A DNA stretch of 64,000 nt from Pecten maximus. Its lineage: Eukaryota. The stretch spans positions 3,720,001 through 3,784,000 of the forward strand of contig NC_047029.1 of the NCBI RefSeq assembly GCF_902652985.1. The letters are read 5' to 3'. Each line of letters opens with the position of its first letter. Position 1 is the first letter of the stretch. Under the pieces are notes generated by a model. The model worked only from the letters and a program-made list of their open reading frames with translations, made no database searches and was not told the DNA's origin. Position numbers and translations under genes: made by a program. Of the stretch, positions 9,612 through 64,000 are shown in pieces.

Positions 9612-9647
<36 letters not shown>

Positions 9648-41509: not shown

Positions 41510-41565
41510 TCACCATTTCATATCCTTTATTATCCATTTTTGAGAAGCACTACCATCACAAGCTC
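41510..41565 (-). CDS. GALNT1: GALNT last coding exon [18 protein letters not shown]
   Basis: gtttcag acceptor, phase 1, final Cys and QxW, TGA. Confidence 0.9.
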
Positions 41566-44500
41566 CTGAAACAGAAGAAAGTTCTGGCTACAATACACAT
41601 TACATTGTACAACTTTTAAAAATAACAACATTGTTATGTCATTCCCAATTTAATTGTATTTGCACCAGATTCTTAGCGACACCAAACGGTGTCGGATAAT
41701 TCCACGTTTTCATATAGTAGTGCGCTCTGGCCCTACACCAGACATGGTGTCAGGGCAAGAGGAAACTCGGCCTATGGCTAGACATTGTGGGTGAGTAATG
41801 GAGAGGGGAAATGGCTTGACATAGTAGCGGAGCCAAAGTCTCAAATCAATTATGTTGTATACACATTACTGATTTACCTAGCATTTACTCTGTTTTTAAA
41901 TATATCAAAATTTACCACTGAATCACAAATCGATAGTTTAGACACTGTGGGTGAGGATTTATATGAGAACATACAGCTTGACAGCTCCTAGACACTAAGG
42001 GTGGGTATTGGAGAGGGGAGACAGCTTCACAGCACCAAAACACTGTGGGTGGGTATTGGAGAGGGGAGACAGCTTCACAGCACCAAAACACTGTGGGTAG
42101 GTATTGGAGAGGGCAGATGGATTGATAGAGCCTAGTATATACAAAGTGGGCAGGTATTGGAGAGGGCAGATAGGACCTAGACACAGTGGGCAGGTACTGG
42201 AAAGGGCAGATAGGATCTAGACACAGTGGGTAGGTACTGGAGAGGGAAGATAAGACCTAGACAATGTGGGTGGGTATTGGAGAGGGCAGATAGGACCTAG
42301 ACACAGTGGGCAGGTACTGGAGAGGGGAGATATGACCTAGACACAGTGGGCAGGTATACTGGAAAGGGCAGATAGGATCTAGACAATGTGGGTGGGTACT
42401 GGAGAGGGAAGATAAGACCTAGACAATGTGGGTGGGTATTGGAGAGGGCAGATAGGACCTTGACACAGTGGGCAGGTACTGGAGAGGGGAGATAGGACCT
42501 GGACAATGTGGGTGGGTATTGGAGAGGGCAGATGGATAGACAGGACCTAGACATTGTGGGTGGGTATTGGAGAGGGGAGATGGATAGACAGAACACAGAC
42601 ATCGTGGGCAAGTTTTGGAGAGGGGAGATGGATAGACAGGACCTAAACATTGTGGGCAAGTTTTGGAGAGGGCAGATGGATAGACAGGACCTAGACATTG
42701 TGGGAAAGTTTTAGAGAGGGGAGATGGATAGACAGGACACAGACATTGTGGGCAAGGTTTGGAGAGGGGAGATGGATAGACAGGACACAGACATTGTGTG
42801 CAAGTTTTAGAGGGGAGATGGATAGACAGGACCTAGACATTTTGGGCAAGTTTTAGAGAGGGGAGATGGATAGACAGGACCTAGACATTGTGGGCAAGTT
42901 TTGGAGAGGGGAGATGGATAGACAGGACCTAGACATTGTGGGCACGTTTTGGAGAGGGGAGATGGATAGACAGGACACAGACATTGTGTGCAAGTTTTAG
43001 AGAGGGGAGATGGATAGACAGGACCTAGACATTGTGGGCAAGTTTTAGAGAGGGGAGATGGATAGACAGGACCTAGACATTGTGGGCACGTTTTGGAGAG
43101 GGGAGATGGATAGACAGGACACAGACATTGTGTGCAAGTTTTAGAGAGGGGAGATGGATAGACAGGACCTAGACATTGTGGGCAAGTTTTGGAGAGGGGA
43201 GATGGATAGACAGGACCTAGACATTGTGGGCAAGTTTTGGAGAGGGGAGATGGATAGACAGGACCTAGACATTGTGGGCAAGTTTTGGAGAGGGGAGATG
43301 GATAGACAGGACCTAGACATTGTGGGCAAGGTTTGGAGAGGGGAGATGGATAGACAGGACCTAGACATTGTGGGCAAGTTTTGGAGAGGGGAGATGGATA
43401 GACAGGTCACAGACATTGTGGGCAAGTTTTGGAGAGGGGAGATGGATAGACAGGACCTAGACATTGTGGACAAGTTTTAGAGAGGGGAGATGGATAGACA
43501 GGACACAGACATTGTGGGCAAGGTTTGGAGAGGGGTGATGGATAGACAGGACACAGACATTGTGGGCAAGTTTTGGAGAGGGGAGATGGATAGACAGGAC
43601 ACAGACATTGTGGGCAAGTTTTGGAGAGGGGAGATGGATAGACAGGACACAGACATTGTGGGCAAGGTTTGGAGAGGGGAGATGGATAGACAGGACCTAG
43701 ACATTGTGGGCAAGTTTTGGAGAGGGGAGATGGATAGACAGGACACAGACATTGTGGGCAAGGTTTGGAGAGGGGAGATGGATAGACAGGACCTAGACAT
43801 TGTGGGCAAGGTTTGGAGAGGGGAGATGGATAGACAGGACCTAGACATTGTGGGCAAGTTTTGGAGAGGGCAGATGGATAGACAGGACCTAGACATTGTG
43901 GGCAAGTTTTAGAGAGGGGAGATGGATAGACAGGACACAGACATTGTGTGCAAGTTTTAGAGGGGAGATGGATAGACAGGACACAGACATTGTGGGCAAG
44001 TTTTAGAGGGGAGATGGATAGAAAGGACCTAGACATTGTGGGAAAGTTTTGGAGAGGGGAGATGGATAGACAGGTCCTAGACATTGTGGGCAAATTTTAG
44101 AGAGGGGAGATGGATAGACAGGACACAGACATTGTGGGCAAGTTTTGGAGAGGGCAGATGGATGGACAGGACCTAGACATTGTGGGCAAATTTTAGAGAG
44201 GGGAGATGGATAGACAGGACACAGACATTGTGGGCAAGTTTTGGAGAGGACAGATGGATAGACAGGACACAGACATTGTGGGCAAGTTTTGGAGAGGGCA
44301 GATGGATAGACAGGCCACAGACATTGTGGGCAAGTTTTAGAGAGGGCAGATGGATAGACAGGACACAGACATTGTGGGCAAGTTTTGGAGAGGGCAGATG
44401 GATAGACAGGACACAGACATTGTGGGCAAGTTTTAGAGAGGGGAGATGGATAGACAGGACACAGACATTGTGGGAAAGTTTTAGAGAGGGGAGATGGATA

Positions 44501-47500
44501 GACAGGACACAGACATTGTGGGCAAGTTTTGGAGAGGGGAGATGGATAGACAGGACCTAGACATTGTGGGAAAGTTTTGGAGAGGGCAGATGGATTGACA
44601 GGACCTAGACATTGTGGGCAAATTTTAGAGAGGGGAGATGGATAGACAGGACCTAGACATTGTGGGCAAGTTTTGGAGAGGGGAAATGGATAGACAGGAC
44701 ACAGATATTGTGGGCAAGGTTTGGAGAGGGGAGATGGATAGACAGGACCTAGACATTGTGGGAAAGTTTTGAAGAGGGGAGATGGATAGACAGGACACAG
44801 ACATTGTGGGAAAGTTTTGAAGAGGGGAGATGGATAGACAGGACACAGACATTGTGGGAAAGTTTTGAAGAGGGGAGATGGATAGACACACCTAGATACT
44901 ATGGATAAGTATTGGACATGTAGAGGAAGGCTGGGGATAGAATCTTACCAATTGTTGGTGCCTCCCTATCTGACGGCTTGGCAGCACCTAGACATTGTTT
45001 GCTATTAATGTGTCGCAGCTCCAATGTCTGTAAAACAAACAAACATGATTTACAACACCTAACAAATAGCATCAGATCTGATAGAGATAACAATACTTGT
45101 GTCACATAAAATACTCTCATAATCTTCTAGTTACATTATGCTCGAGTTTCATTAATAATCCTACCCAATAATAAATAACCCTACCTTAAGGGTACAACAA
45201 TTATAAAACATCCCCTGTATATACTTCAGTCCCCTATTTGAGATTTGGAATGACCATTTTGATCACACTTATTAAAAAGGATTTTTAAGCAAAAAAAAAA
45301 AAAATATTTTTTTAACTGTTTCCATTGTTATGTCAAAAATGGATACCACAAATTATGAATTTGTTCCCCTACAAAAAACAGAGGAACACTTCAGGATAAC
45401 TACACATTAAATGTTTATATTAGGTTAGGAACTCAAGGGTGACCAGGCCAAACCAAGTCTACGAAAACATGATGATAATTCAATATTCAAACAGAGTTAA
45501 ACTCCCATATTGTACCGGTAAGTAAATTTGTTAGAAGTTGCTGGTGATCAGATTTTAGTATTATTATAACATACATGCTGGTGATCAGATTTTAGTATTA
45601 TTATAACATACAAATTTATTTAACTGTACACAGTGAGTTGATGCATGGATGGCTCTATATAACAACACTGTCATAGTTTATATCGTTCAACAATTAAATG
45701 TGCTAGCATCATAATAGCAAGTTCAAAACGAGATACAGCTGTACGTGTCATTGATCACATGTATAGGCTCAGAATAACAGATTTAAAATACACTGAATCA
45801 TAGATAAAAATAAAACATGGTTCACTTAACCATCATATCATTCAAATTAATATATATCGGAAAAATTGCCTGTCTTTAATCCCTTTTTTTCAAATTCCAA
45901 AACAAATAATACTGCAAAGCGATGTAGGGTGAAATTCTGAAACCTTACAAAGGAATATTCTGCACAATTTCTGTCTGTTCTGTACCTTACATGAAGAACT
46001 TTTTCAAACTACTCTACTAGGAAAGCTCATTCAGTTAGTTAAGGCAATGTAACCTCAGGCGAAGATCCCAGGTACTTGTTTCAACACTCACCACCAATGG
46101 CGGTTTGTGTTTCTCAGGAAGCTGAGAAATAAATTGTTCTGAGCTGACCTATGTGGTTGTGTCCTTGGACAAAACACTTTACCCTTATTGCGCTGGATGA
46201 CATGCCACCTCGCAACAGGCTATTTGTTAGTTGTTCAATGATGTCGTCACCAACTATTACATGGAGACCCCGCCTCAAAATGACCCAACCGTTCACGAGG
46301 CAATAAACCAAACAAACAAATCTTTAAAGCTATTGTCAGCATCAAAATATCTTTCCTGTGGTCAGTTTGGAAAAATGCAACTAACATGTGACTGCCTTAT
46401 TATGGTGGATTTGGAAATCCAGAACTGAAGGGTCACAGAATCATGGACTTTATGCAAGTAATGGATGAATACAAAAGTGTGTACATTGTAAACCTACCAT
46501 TTCTACTGGCATCACAATTTCTTTGCTTATTAAGCTTATTTCTTGTGAATTTTAAAATGTACATATTAGATATCTCACACTGTTTAGCTAATTTAATGCA
46601 AACCTGATGTGATGCAATGAGGGCCATGAGGATGTTTATCAATCGATCTAGATAGATCAACATCAAATTTCTATAAATCAAATATTGTATGTTTGGTAAA
46701 TTGCGGCATATTATTTTCATAACAAAATATTACGCTTTTGTCAATTCAATTTTCACAAAAAATCATCATATGAAATCCTAACTTGTGCTGAATACCCCTT
46801 TGATCACACACCACAACAGTTCGTCATCTGAGTGAGGTTTTGCCTCTGTCTTGTAGGAACTTGATACAATGATGCACAAATTATATTTTCATTAATAATA
46901 AATGTGATTTGACAACATAATAAAGCATTGTTGATGTCCCTCCTCAGTTCAGAAATCGAGCAAACTATATATTATTAGATTTTTATATTAGTAGAAGCCT
47001 TTAATTACGAGACTAAATCAGTGAATTGAATAGAAAAGCGGTTTAATTTGAGAAAAAGAATAACGAAAAAAGAACTTTCAAATTTTACGATGATATTTCA
47101 GAATGACAGATGTTAGAGAGCGTGTACACATAAATTAATTTAGTGTTGAACAATATTACCCATACTTTCTGGAGAGGAGGGACACAGTGTATCAACGTTA
47201 TATCACCTGTCGCTTATGTCAATCAAGGATGTTAATTATTCTAAAATATCAATCTTAAGATCTAGATGAGGAAAGAATTAGATATCAAAATACAAACCGT
47301 TATCTTAGGAAGAGTATCAGGCATGCTGCCTGAACATTGTGAACAATCTCTATAAAATATGGCTTTCTCGCCAACAATGAATGAAAACCTGGTTGACAAT
47401 AAGCGACAATATAATGAAATTGTACGTATCAACACCATTAATACACCAGGCTGGCCAGCATGCTGTGATCCACACTCCATGGTCAACAAGTTCAGGTTAT

Positions 47501-50500
47501 CTCCCCTTCATAATAGGAACAAGTTATTTTCCTTTGTACAGCTAGGTAATGGTTATTTCCACTTTGTAATGAGTATGGGTTATTTCCCCTTTGTAATGAG
47601 TATGGGTTATTTCCCCTTTGTAATGAGTATGGGTTATTTCCCCTTTGTAATGAGTATGGGTTATTTCCCCTTTGTAATGAGTATGGGTTATTTCCCCTTT
47701 GCAATGAGTACGAGTTATTTCCCCTTTGTAATGAGTATGGGTTATTTCCCCTTTGTAATGAGTATGGGTTATTTCCCCTTTGTAATGAGTATGGGTTATT
47801 TCCCCTTTGTAATGAGTAGGGGTAACTTCTCCTTTGTAACGAGTATGGGTTATTTCCCCTTTGTAATGAGTAGGGATAACTTCTCCTTTGAAATGAGTAT
47901 GGGTTATTTCCCCTTTGTAATGAGTATGGGTAACTTCCACTTTGAAATGAGTATGGGTTATTTCTCATTTGTAATATGTATGAGTTATTTTGTAAAAGGT
48001 TTAAGTTATTTTATCCTTTGTTATAGTTATTTCCCCTTAGTAAAAAGAGAAGAGTGAAACATTAAACTTTTAAAATTGTTATAGGTTAAGATGTGGTGAG
48101 TACAACTAAATCAGAGATAGTGTTTGGGTATTGTGAGTTGTGAGAGTGGTTAGTTTATAGACAACAGACTTAATGTCTGATAAACTCTTAAGCCTCTACA
48201 TGTATCTATTTACTAACACACTACATCCATGTCTACTCTATACAGTATCTAATGTACATCTTATTGCTTTTTTATCATAAAACTGTGACACTAAGTTAAA
48301 GTTGCTTTTAATACCAAACAGATCAGCCTTAGATACATCTTCATTTCAAAACTACATACCTAATATAATATCTTGATATGTTTAATTTTTGTTCTTGTAA
48401 ACTATTTCAAAATATAGATAATTTTAATAATAACTGATTAATTAAAGGGTAGTAACATAGACTGTTTGAAAGTAGATATTGCGAGATTCACAAGCAATAG
48501 TTGTGGCAGGTTTAACACTAGTATATTTTACAGCAATGAGCCTGTTCCTGGAAACAAAGCTATATATATATATATATGCATGTCAAATGCATTCCTTGGC
48601 ACATCTGTCATGAATGTTTGGATACTAACATGAACAATTCTTATTAATTACAGAATCAATGTCTATCAGGGAATCAATTAAGCATACATTATAGGTTAGA
48701 TTCAGCATTATCTTAAGTGCTAAGTATCCCTCAATATATATATCAATCAGAAAAGATGTCACACTTGTATCTACTTCCATAACAGTCTTAACCAAATGAC
48801 AACTTTGTTAATGCCAGTCAAAACAATACCATCAAGTGGTATTTCATTGTCCTAATAAAATCTGTATTCTACTTCGTGTAAATGTTGGCCACCTGGACCT
48901 GATATAGGATAAATATGTTTCGCTCCGATTTCCTGAGATTCATACTTTCATACTGTGAACAAACATTACATTGTCAAGGTTAAATATGCACTAGTACATA
49001 ACAAACAACTTTAACAATACCATACTGTAAAAGGTGTATAGACACAACTCTAATACAACAGAATCTGGCCTCACAATTAGTCCAAAACGTACTAATCAGT
49101 AAACAAACATCTGACATGTATCTAGGCATATAAGACATCTTAGCTTTGTGTTAGTAAGGGTTATTCTAAAACAAACGTTAACTAATCCTTGCTCACCTCT
49201 AAACCTACACAGATCTAGAGTTAGCTAAAACATAGAGTTAGCCTAAACCTACACAGAATTAGACTAAACCTACACAGAGTTAGCCTAAACCTACACAGAG
49301 TTAGTCTAAACCTACACAGAGTTAGCCTAAACCTACACAGAGTTAGTCTAAACCTACACAGAATTAGACTAAACCTACAGAGTTAGCCTAAACCTACACA
49401 GAGTTAGACTAAACCTACACAGAGTTAGCCTAAACCTACACAGAGTTAGCCTAAACCTACACAGAATTAGACTAAACCTACACAGAGTTAGCCTAAACCT
49501 ACACAGAGTTAGACTAAACCTACACAGAATTAGACTAAACCTACACAGAGTTAGACTAAACCTACACAGAGTTAGACTAAACCTACACAGAATTAGACTA
49601 AACCTATACAGAGTTAGACTAAACCTACACAGAGTTAGCCTAAACCTACACAGAGTTAGCCTAAACCTACACAGAGTTAGACTAAACCTACACAGAGTTA
49701 GCCTAAACCTACACAGAGTTAGACTAAACCTACACAGAGTTAGCCTAAACCTACACAGAGTTAGCCTAAACCTACAGAGTTAGACTAAACCTACACAGAG
49801 TTAGCCTAAACCTACACAGAGTTAGCCTTAACCTACACAGAGTTAGCCTAAACCTACAGAGTTAGACTAAACCTACACAGAGTTAGCCTAAACCTACAGT
49901 TAGACTAAACCTACACAGAGTTAGACTAAACCTACACAGAGTTAGACAAAACCTACAAATGTGTTAAGAAATACACCTGTGTTAGTCTATACCTACACCT
50001 GTGACAGTCTATACCTACACCTGTGTTAGTCTATACCAACACCTGTGTTAGTCTATACCTACATCTGTGGTAGTCTATACGTATACCTACACCTGTGACA
50101 GTCTATACCTACACCTGTGACAGTCTATACCTACACCTGTGTTAGTCTATACCTACACCTGTGATAGTCTATACCTACACCTGTGTTAGTCTATACCTAC
50201 ACCTGTGGTAGTCTATACCTACACCTGTGTTAGTCTATACCTACACCTGTGTTAGTCTATACCTACATCTGTGATAGTCTATACCTACATCTGTGATAGT
50301 CTATACCTACACCTGTGGTAGTCTATACCTACACCTGTGTTAGTCTATACCTACACCTGTGGTAGTCTATACGTATACCTACACCTGTGACAGTCTATAC
50401 CTACACCTGTGACAGTCTATACCTACACCTGTGACAGTCTATACCTACACCTGTGGTAGTCTATACCTACACCTGTGGTAGTCTATACCTACATCTGTGA

Positions 50501-53500
50501 TAGTCTATACCTACATCTGTGGTAGTCTATACGTATACCTACACCTGTGGTAGTCTATACCTACACCTGTGATAGTCTATACCTACACCTGTGGTAGTCT
50601 ATACCTACACCTGTGTCAGTCTATACCTACACCTGTGTTAGTCTATACCTACACCTGTGATAGTCTATACCTACACCTGTGGTAGTCTATACCTACACCT
50701 GTGATAGTCTATACCTACACCTGCGTTAGTCTATACCTACACCTGTGTTAGTCTATACCTACACCTGTGTTAGTCTATACCTACACCTGTGATAGTCTAT
50801 ACCTACACCTGTGTTAGTCTATACCTACACCTGTGTTAGTCTATACCTACACCTGTGTTAGTCTATACCTACACCTGTGATAGTCTATACCTTAGTATTA
50901 GCCCAACTCAGTTAGCCTATAAATTGTATATAATTATATGTGTGTATAAAGCCCATACCTACACTGTGTCTTTTTATATATAAAAACATTCACAAGTATA
51001 TCAGCCTATATATACCTACATAATATATATATATATGTTAGACAATATGTATATACACCTGTGTTAAACAATACCTGCAACTTTGCTTGCCTTAATATAT
51101 TTACATATTAATATGAACCTATATATATCAGCCTAAATTAACATAAACATATGCCTATGCACGTGATAGCCTATTCCACATGCATGTTAGCCTATTCCTC
51201 CACCCATTTTATACTACACCTCCACCAATATTAGTATGCCCCTCCACCTGCAGGATAGCCAATCTCTCCTCACCCTATTTTAGGTGGCTACTCAATAATC
51301 TATTTAACACCTTCTTAAGGGGGTTCATTCCTAGGTCCCTTCTCTCCTCAATGTGTACAAGGGGAAACATTTGATTCGTTTTTTCATATCTTATTAACTT
51401 TTAAATAGCACAGTACCAAAAAAATTAAATAGTACAGGTCACAAAAATCATATCATATAGAAAATAATAAAATAAATAAGACAAACTTTAAAAATTAAAA
51501 AAAAAAACACCTTAAAAAAACCTTCCAAAATTTAAATTCTAAAATATATTACAGTGTATTATTGTGTGAGCATCAACTGATTTCTGTCATAAGATAGGGT
51601 TGGAGTTTATCTTTCACATTACAGGGCAGTATAGTGGACCAAACTATATTCCGATGGGTGGACAGATGACCATGTATACAGGACAGATGCAAGTTATGCT
51701 ATTTACTCCTATCATTTTTAATGATATTCATAAATTGATTTATGAACATGGATGAATGGGGTGTATTATATATACAGTATTACAAAGAACAGTGCATCAT
51801 TTAACTTCTACAGGACACACAAGGTCATTCTTGGATAGAGTTTGATCCAGAGAGCAGCACAAAGAGAAGAGAGTGGCTAAAATCCCCGGGATGGGGCAGC
51901 TGGGTGAGAAAGGGGTTAGGCTGTGAAACACCACACCCAATAAGCAAGGTTACAAGCTACAATTCAACACTACCTGTCGCATATATTTCCATCGCCCTTT
52001 TCCACTGTCACACCGCACAAATTTTACTTGATTGTACGCGGCCTCCATACAGATGTTTTCGTCAGTCATTATCTGCTGCTTGCCCGTGTAGGCAAACACC
52101 TGGTGTAATACATGCAGATTTAGCATTATGGACACATGGGAGTGGTAGACATGCCCACAGCTAGGTGGACAAGCCTTACGCCACAGCATGCCAGCCTCAC
52201 AGCTCTGGAAACAATCTTATTAATACCAGCAGCCATGACACAGACGCCTATGTCCACAGACACCAGATACACAGGACACAGGGAGGTAAACTTCAGGATA
52301 ATCTTAATCGTTACAGGTTAATCTGTTGTATCATTAATTAATAATGATTAAAATATGCCACCCAAAGCATGGTACAGAGAAAATGTATGAATAAACAGGA
52401 CAAAAGGTCCATAAACTTTCCATGCAATTAACTGGAAATAGAAATCATAAATCAACATTGGGACATGTTATTTTATCCTGAGAAGTTGACCAGCTGTGTA
52501 ATGCAGTTCCAGTGCGTGTGGTCAGTTGGCATGGCTGGTCAGTTCTGTAGATGTCAGATCAAGGACAGCCAGTTACCTGTCCGTTATAATCCCACTGCTG
52601 GTTGCCACCCAGACCATGACACTGAAACAATTTTACCGGCCCACCGATGGACGACACATCCAAACACAAGTCATCAGTTTGTAAAGCTTTCTTTTTGGTG
52701 TAAGAAAATATCTGAAAGTGTGCAGTCATGGTTAATCAAATTAACGATTTAATGATTATTCTTATTTCCAGACATCCCTTTATCAGAAGATCAACATAAG
52801 TAATTCATAACAATCATTAATATCAATATATATTGCAAGTTTATATTTTGAAATTAAAACATGACATTGTAAAAATGTTGCAGCAAATATTCAAAGAAAC
52901 TATTCCAAGACTGATTTATGTTACCCCACACCCATATGCATGACTTTCTAAAACACAAGACAAGAAGTTAATCTGAAAGTCTTGAAGGAGTCTTGAACAC
53001 CAATTCTCAAAATCCACCTAGATTGCATATTCTTTACTTGTGAATTGAACCAAAGCCTTTTAAATTGTTTTATCATAGTTTTTACCCATTCTTTCAATTG
53101 ATTCCTCTACCCTACCTGTTTGTCTCCCTTGAAATATTGTCTATTTTTATTGATGGCATCTCCTAAAGTATTGTCCAACTACCTCCCCTGTTTTTATTGA
53201 CGGCATCTCCTAAAATATTGGCAAAATATTCCCTTGCCCCAGCTACCTAAATGCATTCCATAAAATATATGATTAATTCCCATCTTACATAGTTAACTCC
53301 TCTATAATATCCAAATACTTCCCCTGCCTTGCCTAGCTGCCTGTCGTTATTTATGTGATAAATTCATCATTCATTCTTGCCTAGTTACCTCCCCTATAAT
53401 ATCTGATTACCTCCCCTGCCTAACCTAGTTACCTCCCCTATAATATCTGATTATCTCCCCTACCTTACCTGGATACCTCCCCTATAATATCTGAATACCT

Positions 53501-56500
53501 CCCCTGTCTTACATAGTTACCTCCCCTGCCTTACATAGTTACCTCCCCTATAATATCCGATTACTTCCCCATCTTACCTGGTTGCCGCCCATGCCATGAC
53601 AGTTGACAAGGCCAACTTTCTCCCCGCTCTTCCTTCCCATACTGTCCACACAGTGACCTGTCTCTTTGTTACGAATCTGTTAACATAAAACAGGTATGAC
53701 GAATCTGTTAACATGAAACAGGTATGACGAATGTGTTACCATATAACAGGTATGACGAATGTGTTAACATAAAACAGGTATGATGAATGTGTTACCATAT
53801 AACAGGTATGACAAATCTGTTAACATAAAACAGGTATGACGAATCTGTTATAACAGGTAACCGGTATGACAAATCTGTTAACATGAAACAGGTATGACAA
53901 ATCTGTTAACATGAAACAGGTATGACAAAGTGTTGTAATGAAAAAAGAATATTTCTTATTGCGTATAATATAACATTTTACTTTAAAGGAATCAACAAAA
54001 CCTACATACCTATATGTATGCATTCTGGTGTATTTTTTTTCTCTGCATAAATTGGGATTAAAATATTTATTAAAACTTTATTAAAACTTCTATGTTTGAC
54101 TGTAGATGTTCAGATTTAAAGAGAACCCTCTCCTAACAAAGGCTTAAATATAGATAGGTGCACTGTATATAGAGTATATAGTAATAACGATAGTGAGTTC
54201 CAGTATAGGTACTGGATCCTAACAAACAGATGTTCGCTGGATACGTATTACTAGAAATAGTAAATTGGTAGTGTAGTAATAACTACAGTACAGACAAGTA
54301 AATTGATGAGGCAATTCACCCCTTAATGAAGATGCAAGTAGATTACAAACGATCACATACAAACATTTAACATGAAACAGTTACATAACTTTAGTAGATA
54401 ATCAACAAACAATATCTTTCTGTTTATGTTAATGATCTGTTCGGTCCATAATTCATTCGCTGGAAGCCTATTCTAATTAATCAGAAAAAGAAAATATCTT
54501 TGGTGACATATATATAAATAGATACACAAATGTCTTCATACTGAATGACTTTTGGTCTCCAGTACAAAAGTCACCGATTACCCCCCTACCATTCTAACAC
54601 CAGACACGTTTGTAAATGCCAGTAATTCTCACCTCTCCCAAGGCGAAGTAGTCCACTGGCATCTGAGATTCTGGATACACGTTTTCTAAGTACCAGCGGA
54701 AACTTTTACAATTCATTTTCTTCCTCATGTCTTTTCTAGCTGTCACGTCCCCGTAACTGGTACTTTTCACCGCTGCAGTAAATAAGACATTTCAGAACTT
54801 TAATAAATTGTTAAACATGCAGTACCATCCTCTGATGACAAATCACTTTCGAAAGAGAAAGCGTATGAGGAAATAGCACTTGGGGCATTTTTTGAGTGAG
54901 TCTGAACACTGAAAATAGAGCAAAGTTAATCCAGATATAGGATGTACAGCATCTTTGCTTAAAAAAAAGATCCACAGGTCAGGAGTAAAAAGATGAATTC
55001 ATTCCACAGCTTCCTGAGGCAAAGTTAAATGGGAACATCCAATAAACTTCCTTAATATAGACCAAAATCATTATTTTCTACCTCAAAATTCTGTGATTAA
55101 TGAATCTTAAATTCAAAAGAAATCAAAAGTGAAGATTCATACCCTTAACCATCTGTTTGTCTGGTTAGAAGGAGACAGCAAATGTAGAAGAGAAAGATTG
55201 ATACCTGGATTTATTTTATAGAAGAATTCCTTGTATTCATCCATCCACACCTCCACAATACGTTGTGTGTTGTGGTTGATGATGCGTGCCACGCCCCCAG
55301 GCCAGGAGTATGGTGAGGTCTTCCTGAACACGTGTCCGACTCTGGAGCAGGTCACAATAAACACCTGTCCGCCGCACATCCATACCTACAAAACAGGGAG
55401 ATTGATACACATCCATACGTACAAAACAGGGAGATTGATACACATCCATACGTACAAAACAGGGAGATTGATACACATCCATACCTACAAAACAGGGAGA
55501 TTGATACACATCCATACGTACAAAACAGGGAGATTGATACACATCCATACGTACAAAACAGGGAGATTGATACACATCCATACCTACAAAACAGGGAGAT
55601 TGATACACATCCATACGTACAAAACAGGGAGATGTATACACATCCATACGTACAAAACAGGGAGATGGATACACATCCATACGTACAAAACAGGGAGATT
55701 GATACACATCCATACCTACAAAACAGGGAGATGGATACACATCCATACCTACAAAACAAGGAGATTGATACACATCCATACGTACAAAATAGGGAGATTG
55801 ATACACATCCATACCTACAAAACAGGGAGATTGATACACATCCATACGTACAAAACAGGGAGATTGATACACATCCATACCTACAAAACAGGGAGATGTA
55901 TACACATCCATACCTACAAAATAAGGGAGACGGACACACATCCATACCTACAAAACAGGGAGATGTATACACATCCATACCTACAAAACAGGGAGATTGA
56001 TACACATCCATACGTACAAAACAGGGAGATTGATACACATCCATACGTACAAAACAGGGAGATGTATACACATCCATACGTACAAGTCCCTAACACTCCC
56101 CTACCCCATATATACAATACTTACTCAGTGAAGGGCATCTCTAAGTCCCTAACACTCCCCTACCCCATATATACAATACTTACTCAGTGAAGGACATCTC
56201 TAAGTCCCTAACACTCCCCTACCCCCTATATACAATACTTACTCAGTGAAAAACATCTCCAAGTCCCTAACACTCCCCTACCCCATATATACAATACTTA
56301 CTCAGTGAAGGACATCTCCAAGTCCCTAACACTCCCCTACCCCATATATACAATACTTACTCAGTGAAGGACATCTCTAAGTCACTAACACTCCCCTACC
56401 CCATATATACCATACTTACTCAGTGAAGGACATCTCCAAGTCCCTAACACTCCCCTACCCCATATATACAATACTTACTCAGTGAAAAACATCTCCAAGT

Positions 56501-59500
56501 CCCTAACACTCCCCTACCCCATACAATACTCACTCTGAAAGGCATCTCTAAGTCCCTAACACTCCCCTACCCCATACAATACTCACTCTGAAGGACATCT
56601 CTAAGTCCCTAACACTCCCCTACCCCATATATACAATACTTACTCAGTGAAGGACATCTCTAAGTCCCTAACACTCCCCTACCCCATATATACAATACTT
56701 ACTCAGTGAAGGACATCTCTAAGTCCCTAACACTCCCCTACCCCATATATACAATACTTACTCAGTGAAGGACATCTCCAAGTCCCTAACACTCCCCTAC
56801 CCCATATATACAATACTTACTCAGTGAAAAACATCTCCAAGTCCCTAACACTCCCCTACACCATATATACAATACTTACTCAGTGAAGGACATCTCCAAG
56901 TCCCTAACACTCCCCTACACCATATATACAATACTTACTCAGTGAAAAACATCTCCAAGTCCCTAACACTCCCCTACACCATATATACAATACTTACTCA
57001 GTGAAGGACATCTCCAAGTCCCTAACACTCCCCTACCCCATATATACAATACTTACTCAGTGAAGGACATCTCTAAGTCCCTAACACTCCCCTACCCCAT
57101 ATATACAATACTTACTCAGTGAAGGACATCTCTAAGTCCCTAACACTCCCCTACCCCATATATACAATACTTACTCAGTGAAGGACATCTCTAAGTCCCT
57201 AACACTCCCCTACCCCATATATACAATACTTACTCAGTGAAGGACATCAGTCCCTAACACTCCCCTACCCCATATATACAATACTTACTCAGTAAAGGAT
57301 ATCTCTAAGTCCCTAACACTCCCCTACCCCATACATCTCTAAGTCCCTAACACTCCCCTACCCCATATATACAATACTTACTCAGTGAAGGACATCTCTA
57401 AGTCCCTAACACTCCCCTACCCCCTATATACAATACTTACTCAGTGAAAAAACATCTCCAAGTCCCTAACACTCCCCTACCCCATATATACAATACTTAC
57501 TCAGTGAAGGACATCTCCAAGTCCCTAACACTCCCCTACCCCATATATACAATACTTACTCAGTGAAGGACATCTCTAAGTCACTAACACTCCCCTACCC
57601 CATATATACCATACTTACTCAGTGAAGGACATCTCCAAGTCCCTAACACTCCCCTACCCCATATATACAATACTTACTCAGTGAAAAACATCTCCAAGTC
57701 CCTAACACTCCCCTACCCCATACAATACTCACTCTGAAGGACATCTCTAAGTCCCTAACACTCCCCTACCCCATACAATACTCACTCTGAAGGGCATCTC
57801 TAAGTCCCTAACACTCCCCTACCCCATATATACAATACTTACTCTGAAGGACATCTCTAAGTCCCTAACACTCCCCTACCCCATACAATACTCACTCTGA
57901 AGGGCATCTCTAAGTCCCTAACACTCCCCTACCCCATACAATACTCACTCTGAAGGACATCTCTAAGTCCCTAACACTCCCCTACCCCATATATACAATA
58001 CTTACTCAGTGAAGGACATCTCTAAGTCCCTAACACTCCCCTACCCCATATATACAATACTTACTCAGTGAAGGACATCTCCAAGTCCCTAACACTCCCC
58101 TACACCATATATACAATACTTACTCAGTGAAAAACATCTCCAAGTCCCTAACACTCCCCTACACCATATATACAATACTTACTCAGTGAAGGACATCTCC
58201 AAGTCCCTAACACTCCCCTACCCCATATATACAATACTTACTCAGTGAAGGACATCTCTAAGTCCCTAACACTCCCCTACCCCATATATACAATACTTAC
58301 TCAGTGAAGGACATCTCTAAGTCCCTAACACTCCCCTACCCCATATATACAATACTTACTCAGTGAAGGACATCTCTAAGTCCCTAACACTCCCCTACCC
58401 CATATATACAATACTTACTCAGTGAAGGACATCAGTCCCTAACACTCCCCTACCCCATATATACAATACTTACTCAGTAAAGGATATCTCTAAGTCCCTA
58501 ACACTCCCCTACCCCATACATCTCTAAGTCCCTAACACTCCCCTACCCCATATATACAATACTTACTCAGTGAAGGACATCTCTAAGTCCCTAACACTCC
58601 CCTACCCCCTATATACAATACTTACTCAGTGAAAAACATCTCCAAGTCCCTAACACTCCCCTACCCCATATATACAATACTTACTCAGTGAAGGACATCT
58701 CCAAGTCCCTAACACTCCCCTACCCCATATATACAATACTTACTCAGTGAAGGACATCTCTAAGTCACTAACACTCCCCTACCCCATATATACCATACTT
58801 ACTCAGTGAAGGACATCTCCAAGTCCCTAACACTCCCCTACCCCATATATACAATACTTACTCAGTGAAAAACATCTCCAAGTCCCTAACACTCCCCTAC
58901 CCCATACAATACTCACTCTGAAGGACATCTCTAAGTCCCTAACACTCCCCTACCCCATACAATACTCACTCTGAAGGGCATCTCTAAGTCCCTAACACTC
59001 CCCTACCCCATATATACAATACTTACTCTGAAGGACATCTCTAAGTCCCTAACACTCCCCTACCCCATACAATACTCACTCTGAAGGGCATCTCTAAGTC
59101 CCTAACACTCCCCTACCCCATACAATACTCACTCTGAAGGACATCTCTAAGTCCCTAACACTCCCCTACCCCATATATACAATACTTACTCAGTGAAGGA
59201 CATCTCTAAGTCCCTAACACTCCCCTACCCCATATATACAATACTTACTCAGTGAAGGACATCTCTAAGTCCCTAACACTCCCCTACCCCATATATACAA
59301 TACTTACTCAGTGAAGGACATCTCCAAGTCCCTAACACTCCCCTACCCCATATATACAATACTTACTCAGTGAAAAACATCTCCAAGTCCCTAACACTCC
59401 CCTACACCATATATACAATACTTACTCAGTGAAGGACATCTCCAAGTCCCTAACACTCCCCTACACCATATATACAATACTTACTCAGTGAAAACATCTC

Positions 59501-62500
59501 CAAGTCCCTAACACTCCCCTACACCATATATACAATACTTACTCAGTGAAGGACATCTCCAAGTCCCTAACACTCCCCTACCCCATATATACAATACTTA
59601 CTCAGTGAAGGACATCTCTAAGTCCCTAACACTCCCCTACCCCATATATACAATACTTACTCAGTGAAGGACATCTCTAAGTCCCTAACACTCCCCTACC
59701 CCATATATACAATACTTACTCAGTGAAGGACATCTCTAAGTCCCTAACACTCCCCTACCCCATATATACAATACTTACTCAGTGAAGGACATCAGTCCCT
59801 AACACTCCCCTACCCCATATATACAATACTTACTCAGTAAAGGATATCTCTAAGTCCCTAACACTCCCCTACCCCATACATCTCTAAGTCCCTAACACTC
59901 CCCTACCCCATACATACAATACTTACTCAGTGAAAAACATCTCTAAGTCCCTAACACTCCCCTACCCCATACATACAATAATTACTCAGTGAAGGGCATC
60001 TCTAAGTCCCTAACACTCCCCTACCCCATGTATACAATACTTACTCAGTGAAGGACATCTCTAAGTCCCTAACACTCCCCTACCCCATATATACAATACT
60101 TACTCAGTGAAGGACATGTCTAAGTCCCTAACACTCCCCTACCCCATATATACAATACTTACTCAGTGAAGGGCATCTCTAAGTCCCTAACACTCCCCTA
60201 CCCCATACATCTCTAAGTCCCTAACACTCCCCTACCCCATATATACAATACTTACTCAGTGAAGGGCATCTCTAAGTCCCTAACACTCCCCTACCCCATA
60301 CATCTCTAAGTCGCTAACACTCCCCTACCCCATATATACAATACTTACTCAGTGAAGGACATCTCTAAGTCCCTAACACTCCCCTACCCCATATATACAA
60401 TACTTACTCAGTGAAGGACATCTCTAAGTCCCTAACACTCCCCTACCCCATATATACAATACTTACTCAGTGAAGGACATCTCTAAGTCCCTAACACTCC
60501 CCTACCCCATACAATACTCACTCTGAAGGACATCTCTAAGTCCCTAACACTCCCCTACCCCATACAATACTCACTCTGAAGGACATCTCTAAGTCCCTAA
60601 CACTCCCCTACCCCATACAATACTTACTCAGTGAAGGACATCTCTAAGTCCCTAACACTCCCCTACCCCATACAATACTCACTCTGAAGGACATCTCCAA
60701 GTTTTCACCGCCCCATATATCCATGCCTTCATCGTAGGAGCCAACCTCATAGAAGTAGCTTCTATCAATGGCAAATAGCCCACCTGCCATTGTAGGAGTT
60801 CTGTGAATACAAATATCAGTTTTACTAAATACATTGTAAGAGTTCATTTAATATAAACATCATACTAAATATCTGTCACCAAAGTCAAAACAGCTGAAGT
60901 TGGCTTTGTCTTTAGTATGTGTAGTGATCATTGGAGAAGTTGTAAGTTTACCCCCATAGATCTTCTACATCATATGACTGAAATCTTTACTCAAATATCC
61001 AGCATTTAAATTCATATTTAGTGCTTTACCCAGGCATTGTCTACTGCAAGCAACTGGAACTCACAAAAAAAAAAAATATGTAGCAAAATATAGATGAAGA
61101 TTTCTGAGAAGTTTTTTTTATAAGTCAGGATCAATAGAATCTATCATGGGTTTGTTCCGTGGACAGGGATATATCAACCCGAGTGTAAGAGTTTGGCCAG
61201 TCAGCACGAGGCTTGTGTCACATAGCGCGTGCGGCTGTCTTTACCCCCCCTCCCCCCGATCGATTTATCTTTTCCCTAGCAACCGTCATATAACCCTGTG
61301 AAGTATGGGAGAAAAATCAATATCTATAGCTAGTGTGTCTACAGTTTCCATAATTTGTCGGGTAACTGTGCGATCTCCATTTCTGAGAAGTTATTTTATA
61401 AGTCAGGATAAATGAATCCATATCTAGTGTGTCTACAGTTTCCATACTTTGTCGAGTTACTGCGACCTACATTTCTGAGAAGTTATTTTATAAGTCAGGA
61501 TAAATGAATCAATATCTAGTGTGTCTACAGTTTCCATACTTTGTGGGGTTACTGCGATCTCCATTTCTGAGAAGTTATTTTATAAGTCAGGATAAATAAA
61601 TCAATATCTAGTGTGTCTACAGTTTCCATACTTTGTCGGGTTACTGCGACCTACATTTCTGAGAAGTTATTTTATAAGTCAGGATAAATGAATCAATATC
61701 TAGTGTGTCTACAGTTTCCATACTTTGTGGGGTTACTACGACCTACATTTCTGAGAAGTTATTTTATAAGTCAGGATAAATGAATCAATATCTAGTGTGT
61801 CTACAGTTTCCATACTTTGTGGGGTTACTACGACCTACATTTCTGAGAAGTTATTTTATAAGTCAGGATAAATGAATCAATATCTAGTGTGTCTACATTT
61901 CCATACTTTGTGGGGTTACTGCGATCTCCATTTCGTCGGTCCAGCTCCCTCTGCGGTACAGGATACCACCTAAAGTTGAGTTTCCAGTTAAAACCACCCC
62001 AGGTCATATCAGATCCAGTAATATATTCAAACGTGTCATCACTGATGACGTCAATGATTGGGCAAACCACAGAGGTCCTACAACAGAACATAACATAGAA
62101 GAGTCAACACTTGTTGTTTAAGATAATATATACAAACAACAAAACACAACAAAGTCAACACTCATGTTTTAGAATCTATTCACATACCAAATAAGAGTTG
62201 TTTTGATCAAAATCACTGGTTATAGCTTAATCTTGATTAGGCCAAATAAAATTAATTTCTTGTTTCTCAGGCCCGCCCGCATCCAATATGAACCCCCCGC
62301 ACCACTCACTTTTTATTGAAATCAAAAAATAAAAACGTCCGCGCCGAAAAATAAATTCCGGAAAAAAATCCGACCTTGGTTGCCGCAATATCCGGAACTT
62401 GCCCGATCCGTGTTTTAGAATCTCCCAAATCAGATCATTGAAACGTTTGTTTATCTTTTAGAAGCTTGATTTTTCGATTGCACATGGTAGCAATGATTTC

Positions 62501-64000
62501 CATTCAAATATCTTTTTCTGGCAGTGTTATTTTACCCTGGACAATCATATCGAATTATAGCGACACTTGTTCGTTTGGCGAACTTTACAAGGGTCTGCGC
62601 GATGGATCGCTTGGTCCCGACGACTGGTCGTTTCCGCCAAAATTCACGGATCATGATGTGTCGGCCGCGATCGGCAAACGGAAAGCTGATGTTTTTGATA
62701 AAGTAATGATTGATGTCTTTGAAGGTAAACGAAGCAACAAAACTGTTTGGACATTATGTAAGAACCAAATCTTAAAACATAGGGAGTTCCTGATCACTTG
62801 TGTACATCTGGTGAACATTGAACATAAAATTGTATTTCAATTGTTTTTCAATTTAAATTGCAAGTTTAATACCAGAAAATAAAGACAATAGTTTAAAATT
62901 AAGATTTCTTTATTCATTTTATGCATTTAACAATTGACACAATTTCAAATCACATGATTTATGTATATGTATCATTATGTGACTGAGAGAAAAAAATAAA
63001 AAAAAGTCCCTCCCTCATCACATTTTTAGGTAGTAAAAAAAAAAAAAAAAAAGCCTCCCTCCCTCATCCTTTTTTGGAAAAATGTGCCTGAGAAACAAGA
63101 CATTAATTTTGTTTGGCCTTAGTGAAAATCTCATTTCTCCTTTACTTCAAAACCTGAGTGTGTGTATTTCTTAAAATGGGCAGCTTGTAGTAAGAGACTG
63201 ATGACTGTTATAGTTTCCTGAAATTCTGTCAAGTTAGTTTTACCAGAAATTTTATCAGGACTTTAAAATAAAACTGTGATTAGCATTATCACCTTTTGAA
63301 CAACTGGGCCCAGATTGTAATATAATTTTATAATAGTGTATACCTGTCCTTGTGGATCTCGGCTAATAATGGTTCCAGCCAGCCCTCCGTACACTCACAG
63401 TGAGCATCCAGGAATGTGATTACATCTCCCTTAGCCGCTGCTGCTCCTACAAACATCACCAAAATCCTTGACCAACATTCATCACCAATTATAGAATTAT
63501 AAAAGATTATAACATTTTCTTAAAATTAATCATGATTTGATATGTGCCTCTTGGTTGTTAAATGCAGTCAATGGTGGGCAATATATTTAAACCTGCATTA
63601 TAGATAGCAGCAGCACTTTGTAAAATAATTTGATGATACCAGTAGTCAGAACAGCACCTACATTTTAGTTCTTGTGCTCTGAGTATCTAGTTCTTGTGCT
63701 CTGAGTATCTAGTTCTTGTGCTCTGAGTATCATCAGGTCAAAATTTTGGGATCAAGAAATGATATCATCATGTATCTGTAGTTTTCTGATTAAGTAACAC
63801 GTAAGACATTGTTGTCTAAAGAGCTTTTTTTCCAGGAGTTGTTACACTAAAAAGAATCAACTGCATTGATTAAACTTCAGAGCCCAGATGATTGAAAGCA
63901 TACTCTTTATATATAAATCAATGTTTTACAGTCAGTAATTACCTGTCAGTCTAGCCCGGATCAGTCCGTTTCGTGACTCTGACCTCATCACCTTCGTAAG
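41510..64000 (-). CDS. GALNT1: Polypeptide N-acetylgalactosaminyltransferase, GALNT1/13-like, 5'-partial. Exons >64000-63943, 63446-63344, 62077-61907, 60800-60683, 55385-55205, 54772-54633, 53676-53578, 52711-52577 (alternative 52099-51974), 45027-44949, 41565-41510
   Basis: Hallmark motifs [58 protein letters not shown], and a ricin-type lectin domain. All junctions are GT-AG and phase-consistent. GALNT1 vs GALNT13 orthology cannot be resolved by eye. Confidence 0.96.
41975..44900. repeat. 40-48-bp minisatellite in the last GALNT intron
   Basis: gacaggacctagacattgtgggcaagttttggagaggggagatggata, about 60 copies. Confidence 0.95.
44949..45027 (-). CDS. GALNT1: GALNT lectin gamma exon [26 protein letters not shown]
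   Basis: 79 nt, tttacag|...|gtaaga, phase 0-1. Confidence 0.9.
46020..46320 (+). mobile_element. Decayed SINE
   Basis: gtgtccttggacaaaacactttacccttattgc core; tail taaaccaaacaaacaaa. Confidence 0.6.
47550..47975. repeat. 27-bp minisatellite (gagtatgggttatttcccctttgtaat)
   Basis: About 15 copies. Confidence 0.95.
49200..50890. repeat. Two adjacent related minisatellites: 21-bp (49200-49957) and 22-bp (49972-50890)
   Basis: acctacacagagttagactaa vs acctacacctgtgttagtctat. Confidence 0.95.
51974..52099 (-). CDS. GALNT1: Putative alternative lectin beta exon [43 protein letters not shown]
   Basis: 126 nt, phase 0-0, caccag|...|gtagtg; aligns to exon A (F.YT.K...TD..C......VK...C......W.Y..Q). 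Confidence 0.8.
52577..52711 (-). CDS. GALNT1: GALNT lectin beta exon [46 protein letters not shown]
   Basis: 135 nt, phase 0-0, canonical CLD and QxW. Confidence 0.95.
53280..53577 (-). repeat. Degenerate repeat derived from the donor junction of exon 53578-53676
   Basis: ttacctggttgccgccc (junction) vs ttacctggatacctccc, taacctagttacctccc. Confidence 0.7.
53578..53676 (-). CDS. GALNT1: GALNT lectin alpha exon [33 protein letters not shown]
   Basis: 99 nt, phase 0-0. Confidence 0.95.
53677..53930 (-). repeat. 28-bp repeat of the acceptor junction of exon 53578-53676
   Basis: Sense unit catacctgttttatgttaacag|ATTCGT x~9. Confidence 0.9.
54633..54772 (-). CDS. GALNT1: GALNT exon [46 protein letters not shown]
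   Basis: 140 nt, phase 1-0; absent from the ORF track. Confidence 0.95.
55205..55385 (-). CDS. GALNT1: GALNT exon [22 protein letters not shown]...FYKINP
   Basis: 181 nt, phase 0-1. Confidence 0.96.
55386..56085 (-). repeat. 33-bp acceptor-junction minisatellite
   Basis: Sense unit tgtatcaatctccctgttttgta(g/c)|GTATGGATG x~21. Confidence 0.95.
56086..60682 (-). repeat. 53-59-bp donor-junction minisatellite
   Basis: Sense unit GAGATGTCCTTCAGA|gtgagtattgtatggggtaggggagtgttagggactta and variant ...TTCActga|gtaagt..., about 80 copies. Confidence 0.95.
60683..60800 (-). CDS. GALNT1: GALNT exon TPTMAGGLF...[11 protein letters not shown]
   Basis: 118 nt, phase 2-0, donor gtgagt. Confidence 0.96.
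61330..61906 (-). repeat. 92-bp donor-junction minisatellite
   Basis: Donor copies at 61905, 61814, 61722, 61630, 61538, 61446; each unit includes the last 27 nt of the exon. Confidence 0.95.
61907..62077 (-). CDS. GALNT1: GALNT exon [18 protein letters not shown]...[11 protein letters not shown]
   Basis: 171 nt, phase 2-2, donor gtatgg. Confidence 0.96.
62240..63118. mobile_element. Non-autonomous TIR element (PIF/Harbinger- or CryptonV-like) inserted into a MITE
   Basis: ~33-bp imperfect TIR ggccaaataaaattaatttcttgtttctcaggc; TTA duplication; empty site visible in the copy at c.39689. Confidence 0.8.
63344..63446 (-). CDS. GALNT1: GALNT exon with DxH motif ([33 protein letters not shown])
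   Basis: 103 nt, phase 1-2. Confidence 0.96.
63667..63731. repeat. 22-bp repeat x3 (agttcttgtgctctgagtatct)
   Basis: Directly visible. Confidence 0.85.
63943..64000 (-). CDS. GALNT1: GALNT exon (partial) [20 protein letters not shown]
   Basis: GLIRARL motif; donor gtaatt. Confidence 0.93.

What the first reader, a model, noticed from the sequence alone, without database searches (positions are those of the whole stretch)
41975..61933. Splice-junction-seeded minisatellites: GALNT introns are repeatedly built from copies of the gene's own exon-intron boundaries
Seen: five arrays abut an exon and have units spanning the junction itself. These are 61330-61906 (donor, 92 bp), 56086-60682 (donor, 53-59 bp), 55386-56085 (acceptor, 33 bp), 53677-53930 (acceptor, 28 bp) and 53280-53577 (donor, degenerate). 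A sixth (41975-44900) carries an exon-like core. In each the exon-proximal copy is the real splice site and the array extends into the intron. Unit sequences are unrelated, so origins are independent. Inference: a recurrent mechanism amplifies junctions (e.g. transcription/splicing-coupled breaks or slippage at exon edges), or only junction-spanning duplications survive because they leave the exon intact. Either way the pre-mRNA has over 100 decoy splice sites that need silencing or are exploited. The neighbouring gene's arrays do not show this pattern.
Basis: partly seen in the sequence, partly recalled or inferred. Interest (0 to 1): 0.9.

Follow-up and report, generated by a model that had tools for sequence, protein, structure and literature searches.

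The report
Minisatellites copied from splice junctions
In a mollusc GALNT gene, several intronic tandem arrays really are copies of the neighbouring exon edge plus its splice site, but this looks like a harmless by-product of a genome that makes minisatellites at a very high rate, not of a process aimed at splice junctions.

Summary
The minus-strand GALNT gene has 11 GT-AG exons in the window. Six of its ten tandem arrays match the adjacent exon far better than shuffled controls. Four clearly start inside the exon and carry the real splice site: B donor (92 bp), C donor (53/59 bp), D acceptor (33 bp) and F acceptor (28 bp). One is degenerate (F donor). The 48-bp array holds an exon-I motif in register but no splice site. 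Intron C-D (5,297 nt) collapses to 58 nt once its two arrays are reduced to one unit each. RNA contigs show that the exon-proximal sites are the ones used.

The proposed junction-amplifying mechanism is not required. In 13 GALNT paralog segments that I did not pre-select (128 junctions, 44 arrays), 7 arrays span a junction against 3.6 expected from uniformly placed tandem duplications (P=0.06). Thirty-seven do not span one. The excess is about two-fold at most and fragile.

Junction-spanning minisatellites are a known kind (human F7, IFI6, CBS). What is unusual here is their density, about 5% of junctions sampled. First-stage notes report the same pattern in at least 8 other windows of this genome; those are unchecked. 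A genome-wide test could not be run.

The parts
61322..61934 (-). 92-bp array, 6.7 copies, after exon B. The first unit is the last 27 nt of exon B plus the real donor plus 65 intron nt. Five further copies keep the donor dinucleotide.
56083..60702 (-). 53/59-bp array, about 79 copies with higher-order blocks, after exon C. The unit is the last 15 nt of exon C plus the donor plus about 37 intron nt. There are 77 donor-like copies including the real one.
   Evidence: real donor used in RNA contig
55375..56085 (-). 33-bp array, 21.5 copies, before exon D. The unit is 22 intron nt plus the first 11 nt of exon D. Nine copies keep AG and 11 have AC. It joins the donor array directly, so intron C-D has no unique sequence.
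   Evidence: real acceptor used
53671..53926 (-). 28-bp array, 9 copies, before exon F. The unit is 21 intron nt plus the first ~7 nt of exon F. Five of the eight copies found keep AG.
   Evidence: joint E-F at 54633/53676 in two RNA runs
53280..53583 (-). Degenerate 22/44-bp array after exon F. The first unit holds about 6 exon nt plus the donor. This is the weakest of the five junction arrays.
   Evidence: 17.5 against highest shuffle score 15; real donor used; same sequence in an independent DNA run
41973..44896 (-). 48-bp array (with 40-bp variants) in the last intron, I-J. It holds a 16/17-nt copy of an internal exon-I motif in register with the array but no splice site. Degenerate units reach to within a few nt of the donor. 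A 122-bp dispersed element (41813-41934) cuts off a solo unit at 41778-41821.
41510..64000 (-). GALNT (polypeptide GalNAc-transferase) gene; its 5' end lies beyond the window. Exons: A0 63945-64000, A 63344-63446, B 61907-62077, C 60683-60800, D 55205-55385, E 54633-54772, F 53578-53676, G 52577-52711, H 51974-52099, I 44949-45027, J 41510-41565.
47551..50892 (.). Three arrays inside intron H-I (27, 21 and 22 bp) that match no exon. They serve as internal controls showing that arrays also arise away from junctions.

Best explanation
These are ordinary local tandem duplications, produced by replication slippage or unequal exchange and later expanded, in a genome that generates minisatellites at a very high rate. 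Arrays make up 37% of this window and about 0.6 arrays occur per kb of intron.

A duplication that straddles an exon-intron junction leaves the exon-proximal copy of the splice site intact and puts the extra copies inside the intron. It is therefore as harmless as a purely intronic duplication, whereas a duplication inside an exon is removed by selection. With short introns (a few hundred nt before the arrays) and units of 20-90 nt, several percent of junctions are expected to be spanned by chance.

The spliceosome keeps using the exon-proximal site: the first 5' site, and the 3' site next to the defined exon. The decoys stay silent, or give transcripts with premature stop codons.

Shown: the structure, the local and independent origin, the use of the proximal sites, and the near-neutral frequency. 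Inferred: the slippage mechanism and the way decoys are ignored.
For: - Units contain exon tail plus splice site.
- The arrays are specific to this locus.
- Four arrays in the same gene, and 37 of 44 in the paralogs, are not junctional.
- Unselected paralog sample: 7 spanning against 3.6 expected, P=0.06, and no excess if 50-70% of the intron was available.
- The exon share of the unit ranges widely, from 0.14 to 0.75, as random placement predicts.
- A 60-bp intron segment is single-copy in one copy of a paralog and about 32 copies in the other. The flanks are 94-98% identical, so arrays are born in place and expand quickly.
- Large blocks at 96-99% identity inside the C-D array show stepwise growth.
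- RNA contigs use the proximal sites.
- Use of a decoy would bring an in-frame stop codon.
- In human F7 the most upstream of several identical donors is chosen (PMC1557585).
Against: - This gene has 4-5 spanning arrays against 0.69 expected.
- Arrays that span or lie within 12 nt of a junction are about two-fold over-represented in the paralogs (P=0.006).
- The same junctions recur in paralogs with unrelated units: B donor in 4 of 11, D acceptor in 3 of 13, F acceptor in 2 of about 7.
- A 58-nt ancestral intron acquiring two arrays is unlikely under a uniform model.
- The sample is a single gene family and only 72 kb.
Confidence: 0.65

Rival explanations
1. A mutational process focused on junctions. 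Splice junctions would be hot spots for minisatellite birth, for example through transcription- or splicing-coupled breaks. Alternatively, an unstable array lying near an exon could capture the junction in later, larger duplications.
For: - 4-5 spanning arrays against 0.69 expected in this gene.
- About two-fold excess of arrays at or within 12 nt of junctions in the paralogs.
- Recurrence at the homologous B-donor, D-acceptor and F-acceptor junctions.
- Copies inside the 92-bp array that are again identical to the exon, suggesting repeated re-sampling.
- At least 8 unchecked first-stage notes of the same pattern elsewhere in this genome.
Against: - The unselected sample is compatible with the neutral model (P=0.06, and higher if less of the intron was available).
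- Most arrays are not junctional.
- The window gene was chosen because of the pattern.
- Given about 0.05 spanning arrays per junction, many windows are expected to show examples by chance.
- No sequence feature common to the junctions was found.
Confidence: 0.2
2. The decoy arrays are maintained because they are useful. Possible roles include recruiting U1 or U2AF, recursive splicing at AG|GT units, or in-frame 27-nt cassette exons from the 92-bp unit.
For: - Nine of the 20 copies of the 33-bp unit found, the real acceptor among them, carry AG|GT.
- The 92-bp unit has the form of a 27-nt exon-like piece followed by a 65-nt GT...AG piece.
- Dual-specific AGGT sites in tandem repeats are used in human (PMC10809524).
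Against: - No decoy junction appears in any RNA contig, although contigs drop rare forms.
- Decoy use in C-D gives stop codons.
- Units differ between paralogs at the same junction, and AG is lost in about half of the acceptor copies.
- The arrays are young and variable.
Confidence: 0.07
3. The arrays are assembly artefacts.
For: A 5.3-kb array is hard to assemble, and its copy number was not verified.
Against: - Contigs of an independent DNA run cover 53294-53703 without a single difference, plus parts of the 28-bp array and the start of the 33-bp array, with raised depth on repeat contigs.
- Variants inside the arrays form ordered higher-order blocks.
- The same kind of array is seen at 8 junctions in the paralogs.
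Confidence: 0.03

Closest known systems
Human minisatellites whose first unit spans an exon-intron boundary: F7 IVS7 (37 bp), IFI6/6-16 (12 nt), CBS IVS13, LMNB2, PDGF intron 4 (PMC1557585)
   Same: An intronic tandem array whose first unit is exon tail plus the authentic donor. Identical pseudo-sites are repeated in the intron, and the most upstream site is the one used.
   Different: In human these are isolated cases, and all the cited ones are at donors. Here 4-5 occur in one gene and on about 5% of the sampled junctions. Acceptor-side arrays also occur, and one intron consists only of its donor array plus its acceptor array.
Introns embedded in tandem repeats with dual-specific AGGT splice sites (UBC, VCX3A; PMC10809524)
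   Same: Repeat units that carry splice-site motifs. The AG-type copies of the 33-bp acceptor array read AG|GT.
   Different: In UBC the same repeated site serves as both 5' and 3' site, and intron length is a multiple of the unit. Here donor and acceptor units are different sequences, the arrays are non-coding, and no internal site was seen in use.
Intron creation or exonisation by tandem duplication of a segment holding AGGT (Rogers model; recalled from my own knowledge, not checked here)
   Same: Tandem duplication produces extra functional-looking splice sites.
   Different: The introns here are old, with positions shared among paralogs. The duplications lengthen existing introns and do not create new ones.

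Membership tests
Junction-spanning minisatellite (F7 IVS7 type) | Tandem array of roughly 10-100-bp units lying in an intron | tested here: met
   TRF; gene model
Junction-spanning minisatellite (F7 IVS7 type) | The first (exon-proximal) unit contains terminal exon nucleotides and the authentic splice site | tested here: met
   unit-versus-exon scores 17.5-50 against highest shuffle scores of 12-15
Junction-spanning minisatellite (F7 IVS7 type) | The splice-site sequence is reiterated as pseudo-sites within the intron | tested here: met
   77 donor-like copies in C-D, 6 in B-C, 20 and 8 acceptor copies
Junction-spanning minisatellite (F7 IVS7 type) | The authentic exon-proximal site is the one used in mRNA | tested here: met
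   RNA contigs: C donor joined to D acceptor, E-F and F-H joints at the model coordinates. The B donor was not covered by the one reads call allowed.
Junction-spanning minisatellite (F7 IVS7 type) | Copy number varies between individuals (VNTR) | tested here: inconclusive
   Contigs cannot count copies. A non-junction array differs 1 against ~32 copies between two diverged copies of a paralog.
Dispersed or transposon-borne satellite family | The same unit occurs at other loci in the genome | tested here: not met
   The 59-bp and 48-bp arrays hit only their own locus. The search skips very common words, so this is not absolute.
Tandem-repeat intron with dual-specific splice sites (UBC type) | The same repeated AGGT site is used as both 5' and 3' splice site, and intron length is a multiple of the unit | tested here: not met
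   Donor and acceptor units of intron C-D are unrelated sequences. No internal joint appears in RNA contigs.
Recursive-splicing ratchet points | Intronic AG|GT sites are used stepwise during intron removal | not testable with these tools
   The motif is present in 9 copies of the 33-bp unit. Intermediates are not visible in assembled contigs.

The most novel reading that the evidence does not exclude
Splice junctions in this mollusc are true hot spots for minisatellite birth, 2-6 times hotter than neighbouring intron. The cause would be a transcription- or splicing-linked process, or capture of the junction by unstable nearby arrays. The same junctions are hit repeatedly in paralogs, so that thousands of junctions genome-wide (about 5%) carry ladders of decoy splice sites.
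Probability: 0.2. Interest if true: 0.75.

Novelty: new member of a known kind. Interest (0 to 1): 0.45.

Why it matters
- If about 5% of junctions in this genome carry reiterated, near-identical splice sites, the genome is a large natural experiment on how the spliceosome chooses among identical sites. In human this question has been studied on single genes such as F7.
- It shows that an intron can grow about 90-fold (58 to 5,297 nt) purely from copies of its own two ends.
- It is a practical warning for gene prediction and read alignment in tandem-repeat-rich invertebrate genomes.

Tried and rejected
1. My first guess, that the 41973-44896 array lies outside the gene, was wrong. Exons I and J place it in the last intron.
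2. "All arrays of the gene abut exons" is rejected: four arrays are internal and match no exon.
3. The 48-bp array is not part of a transposon. A 122-bp dispersed element inserted into it, and the unit occurs only at this locus.
5. One candidate case, the array at 23761-24168, starts about 50 nt after a possible donor and does not span it.
I replaced it with coordinate-based work.
7. Exons were searched one by one by reference.
8. Literature searches for a genome-wide report of this pattern in molluscs found none. That does not show that none exists.
Full report
**Setting.** The window is C15:3720001-3784000 of a 918,306,378-base assembly in 3,983 contigs. RNA runs that hold the gene are labelled as mollusc. 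From memory, the assembly size and contig number match the king scallop reference, but I did not verify this. Tandem arrays (period 8 or more, 2.5 copies or more) cover 37% of the window, in 39 arrays.

**Gene model.** The GALNT gene lies on the minus strand.
- Pfam places the glycosyltransferase and ricin-lectin pieces in the expected order.
- Reading the sequence gives eleven exons with GT-AG introns and consistent phases. Their coordinates are listed under parts.
- I searched the exons one by one and never joined them into a spliced model.
- RNA contigs of two runs from one study join D to E (55205/54772), E to F (54633/53676) and F to H (53578/52099). A contig ending at 55385 continues with the last 16 nt of exon C.
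- So the real C donor, D acceptor, F acceptor and F donor are the exon-proximal copies.

**The observation.** Each junction array starts inside the exon.
- The 92-bp unit holds the last 27 nt of exon B plus the donor.
- The 53/59-bp unit holds the last 15 nt of exon C plus the donor.
- The 33-bp unit holds the first 11 nt of exon D behind 22 intron nt.
- The 28-bp unit holds about 7 nt of exon F.
- The degenerate 22/44-bp array after exon F holds about 6 exon nt.
- In an objective test, unit dimers were aligned to all exons with 25-nt flanks. Six arrays score far above 200 shuffles, each only against its own neighbouring exon. Four arrays in the same gene match no exon.
- Intron C-D is 5,297 nt and shrinks to 58 nt when its two arrays are collapsed to one unit each. 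Over the whole gene, arrays account for about half of intron length: 21,227 nt now against 10,127 nt collapsed.
- Decoys: 76 donor-like copies in C-D, 5 in the 92-bp array, 19 acceptor decoys in the 33-bp array and 7 in the 28-bp array. Of all copies found including the real site, 9 of 20 in the 33-bp array and 5 of 8 in the 28-bp array keep AG.
- Use of a decoy in intron C-D would bring an in-frame stop codon.

**The sixth array.** It lies in the last intron.
- By TRF it starts about 50 nt after the exon-I donor, but degenerate units reach almost to the donor.
- Its unit holds a 16/17-nt copy of an internal exon-I motif. A distal variant matches 21 of 27 nt. The exon motif lies 143 nt (3x48-1) from the first array copy, so it is in register.
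- No unit holds a donor. "Exon-like core" is therefore correct, but a junction origin is only plausible.

**Is a junction-specific mechanism needed?** I used the paralogous GALNT exons found in the same genome as a sample that was not chosen for the pattern. This gave 13 multi-exon paralog segments, 72 kb, 128 junctions and 44 arrays.
- Inspection shows seven arrays whose units contain exon sequence plus the splice site. These are the B donor in three paralogs, the D donor, the E donor, the F acceptor and the D acceptor.
- There is also one young two-copy duplication at a D acceptor. Four further arrays start within 12 nt of a junction.
- The null model lets a tandem duplication of unit length u fall uniformly on tolerated positions: inside a collapsed intron, or straddling a junction. 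It expects 3.6 spanning arrays (observed 7, P=0.06) and 4.8 spanning or within 12 nt (observed 11, P=0.006).
- If only 70% or 50% of today's unique intron sequence was available, for example because the rest is younger insertion or lies outside the gene, the P values rise to 0.23/0.06 and 0.55/0.30.
- For the window gene the same model expects 0.69 against 4-5 observed (P=0.003 and 0.0002). This gene was reported because of the pattern, so those values are inflated by selection.
- At about 0.05 spanning arrays per junction, many windows of this genome should show examples by chance. This fits the eight or more unchecked first-stage notes.

**Origin and age.**
- The 59-bp and 48-bp arrays occur only at their own locus.
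- Inside the C-D array, 301-bp blocks recur at 96-99% identity about 1.2 kb apart, which indicates stepwise growth by large duplications.
- In one paralog a 60-bp intron segment is single-copy on contig C3556 and about 32 copies on C3. The flanks are 94-98% identical. Arrays are therefore born in place from unique sequence and expand fast.
- An independent DNA run carries the F-donor array without a single difference, plus parts of the 28-bp and 33-bp arrays. This argues against an assembly artefact for the short arrays. The copy number of the 5.3-kb array was not verified.

**Comparison with known cases.** Minisatellites whose first unit spans an exon-intron boundary are described for human F7, IFI6, CBS, LMNB2 and PDGF. 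In F7 the most upstream of several identical donors is selected (PMC1557585). Introns embedded in tandem repeats, and dual-specific AGGT sites, are described for UBC and VCX3A (PMC10809524). The arrays here meet the defining features of the first kind. They differ in density, in including acceptor-side arrays, and in one intron made only of its two junction arrays.

**Verdict.** The best explanation is neutral junction-straddling tandem duplication in a minisatellite-rich genome with short introns, with splice-site choice ignoring the decoys. A modest junction bias, and recurrence at the same junction in paralogs (B donor in 4 of 11, D acceptor in 3 of 13, F acceptor in 2 of about 7; all noted post hoc), remain unexplained and need the genome-wide test I could not run.

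Noticed in passing
window 51974-52099 and 52577-52711: Exons G and H are duplicated lectin-beta exons used in a mutually exclusive way. One RNA contig joins F directly to H. Others join G to F and to I, and H to I.
   Followed up: yes
window 54199-54305: A roughly 100-bp element in intron E-F has word depth about 54,000 in a DNA run (baseline about 50) and is also present in RNA contigs that continue into unrelated sequence. It is a very high-copy dispersed repeat.
   Followed up: no
window 41813-41934 and 1063-1184: A 122-bp dispersed element, 92% identical between the two places. At 41.8 kb it is inserted into the distal end of the 48-bp array and splits off a solo unit at 41778-41821.
   Followed up: partly
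L013/L035 (C3556:50305-53842) versus L014/L034 (C3:4452709-4458116): Two diverged copies of one GALNT paralog (haplotig or recent duplicate, flanks 94-98% identical). They differ by a 60-bp intron segment present once in one copy and about 32 times in the other.
   Followed up: partly
paralog loci L005/L063, L007, L015, L012, L049, L048, L024, L033: The same junctions carry unrelated junction-spanning arrays in different paralogs: exon-B donor in 4 of 11 genes, exon-D acceptor in 3 of 13, exon-F acceptor in 2 of about 7. This is more recurrence than a uniform per-junction rate suggests, but it was noted post hoc.
   Followed up: partly
L016-L022, L028, L029, L032, L038-L040, L042 (C1, C5, C10, C11): Seven GALNT-like copies carry exons A-E in one open frame of 282-623 codons. 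They are intronless, possibly retrocopies.
   Followed up: no
window 19125-20242 (minus strand): Open frames with reverse-transcriptase-like motifs, probably a fragment of a non-LTR retroelement in the neighbouring region.
   Followed up: no
window 9614-9645, 13907-13933, 18023-18049: Perfect homopolymer runs of 32 G, 27 C and 27 C.
   Followed up: no
window 61354-61906: Each 92-bp unit has the form of a 27-nt exon-like piece followed by a 65-nt piece that starts with GT and ends with a pyrimidine run plus AG. In-frame cassette exons are therefore conceivable.
   Followed up: no
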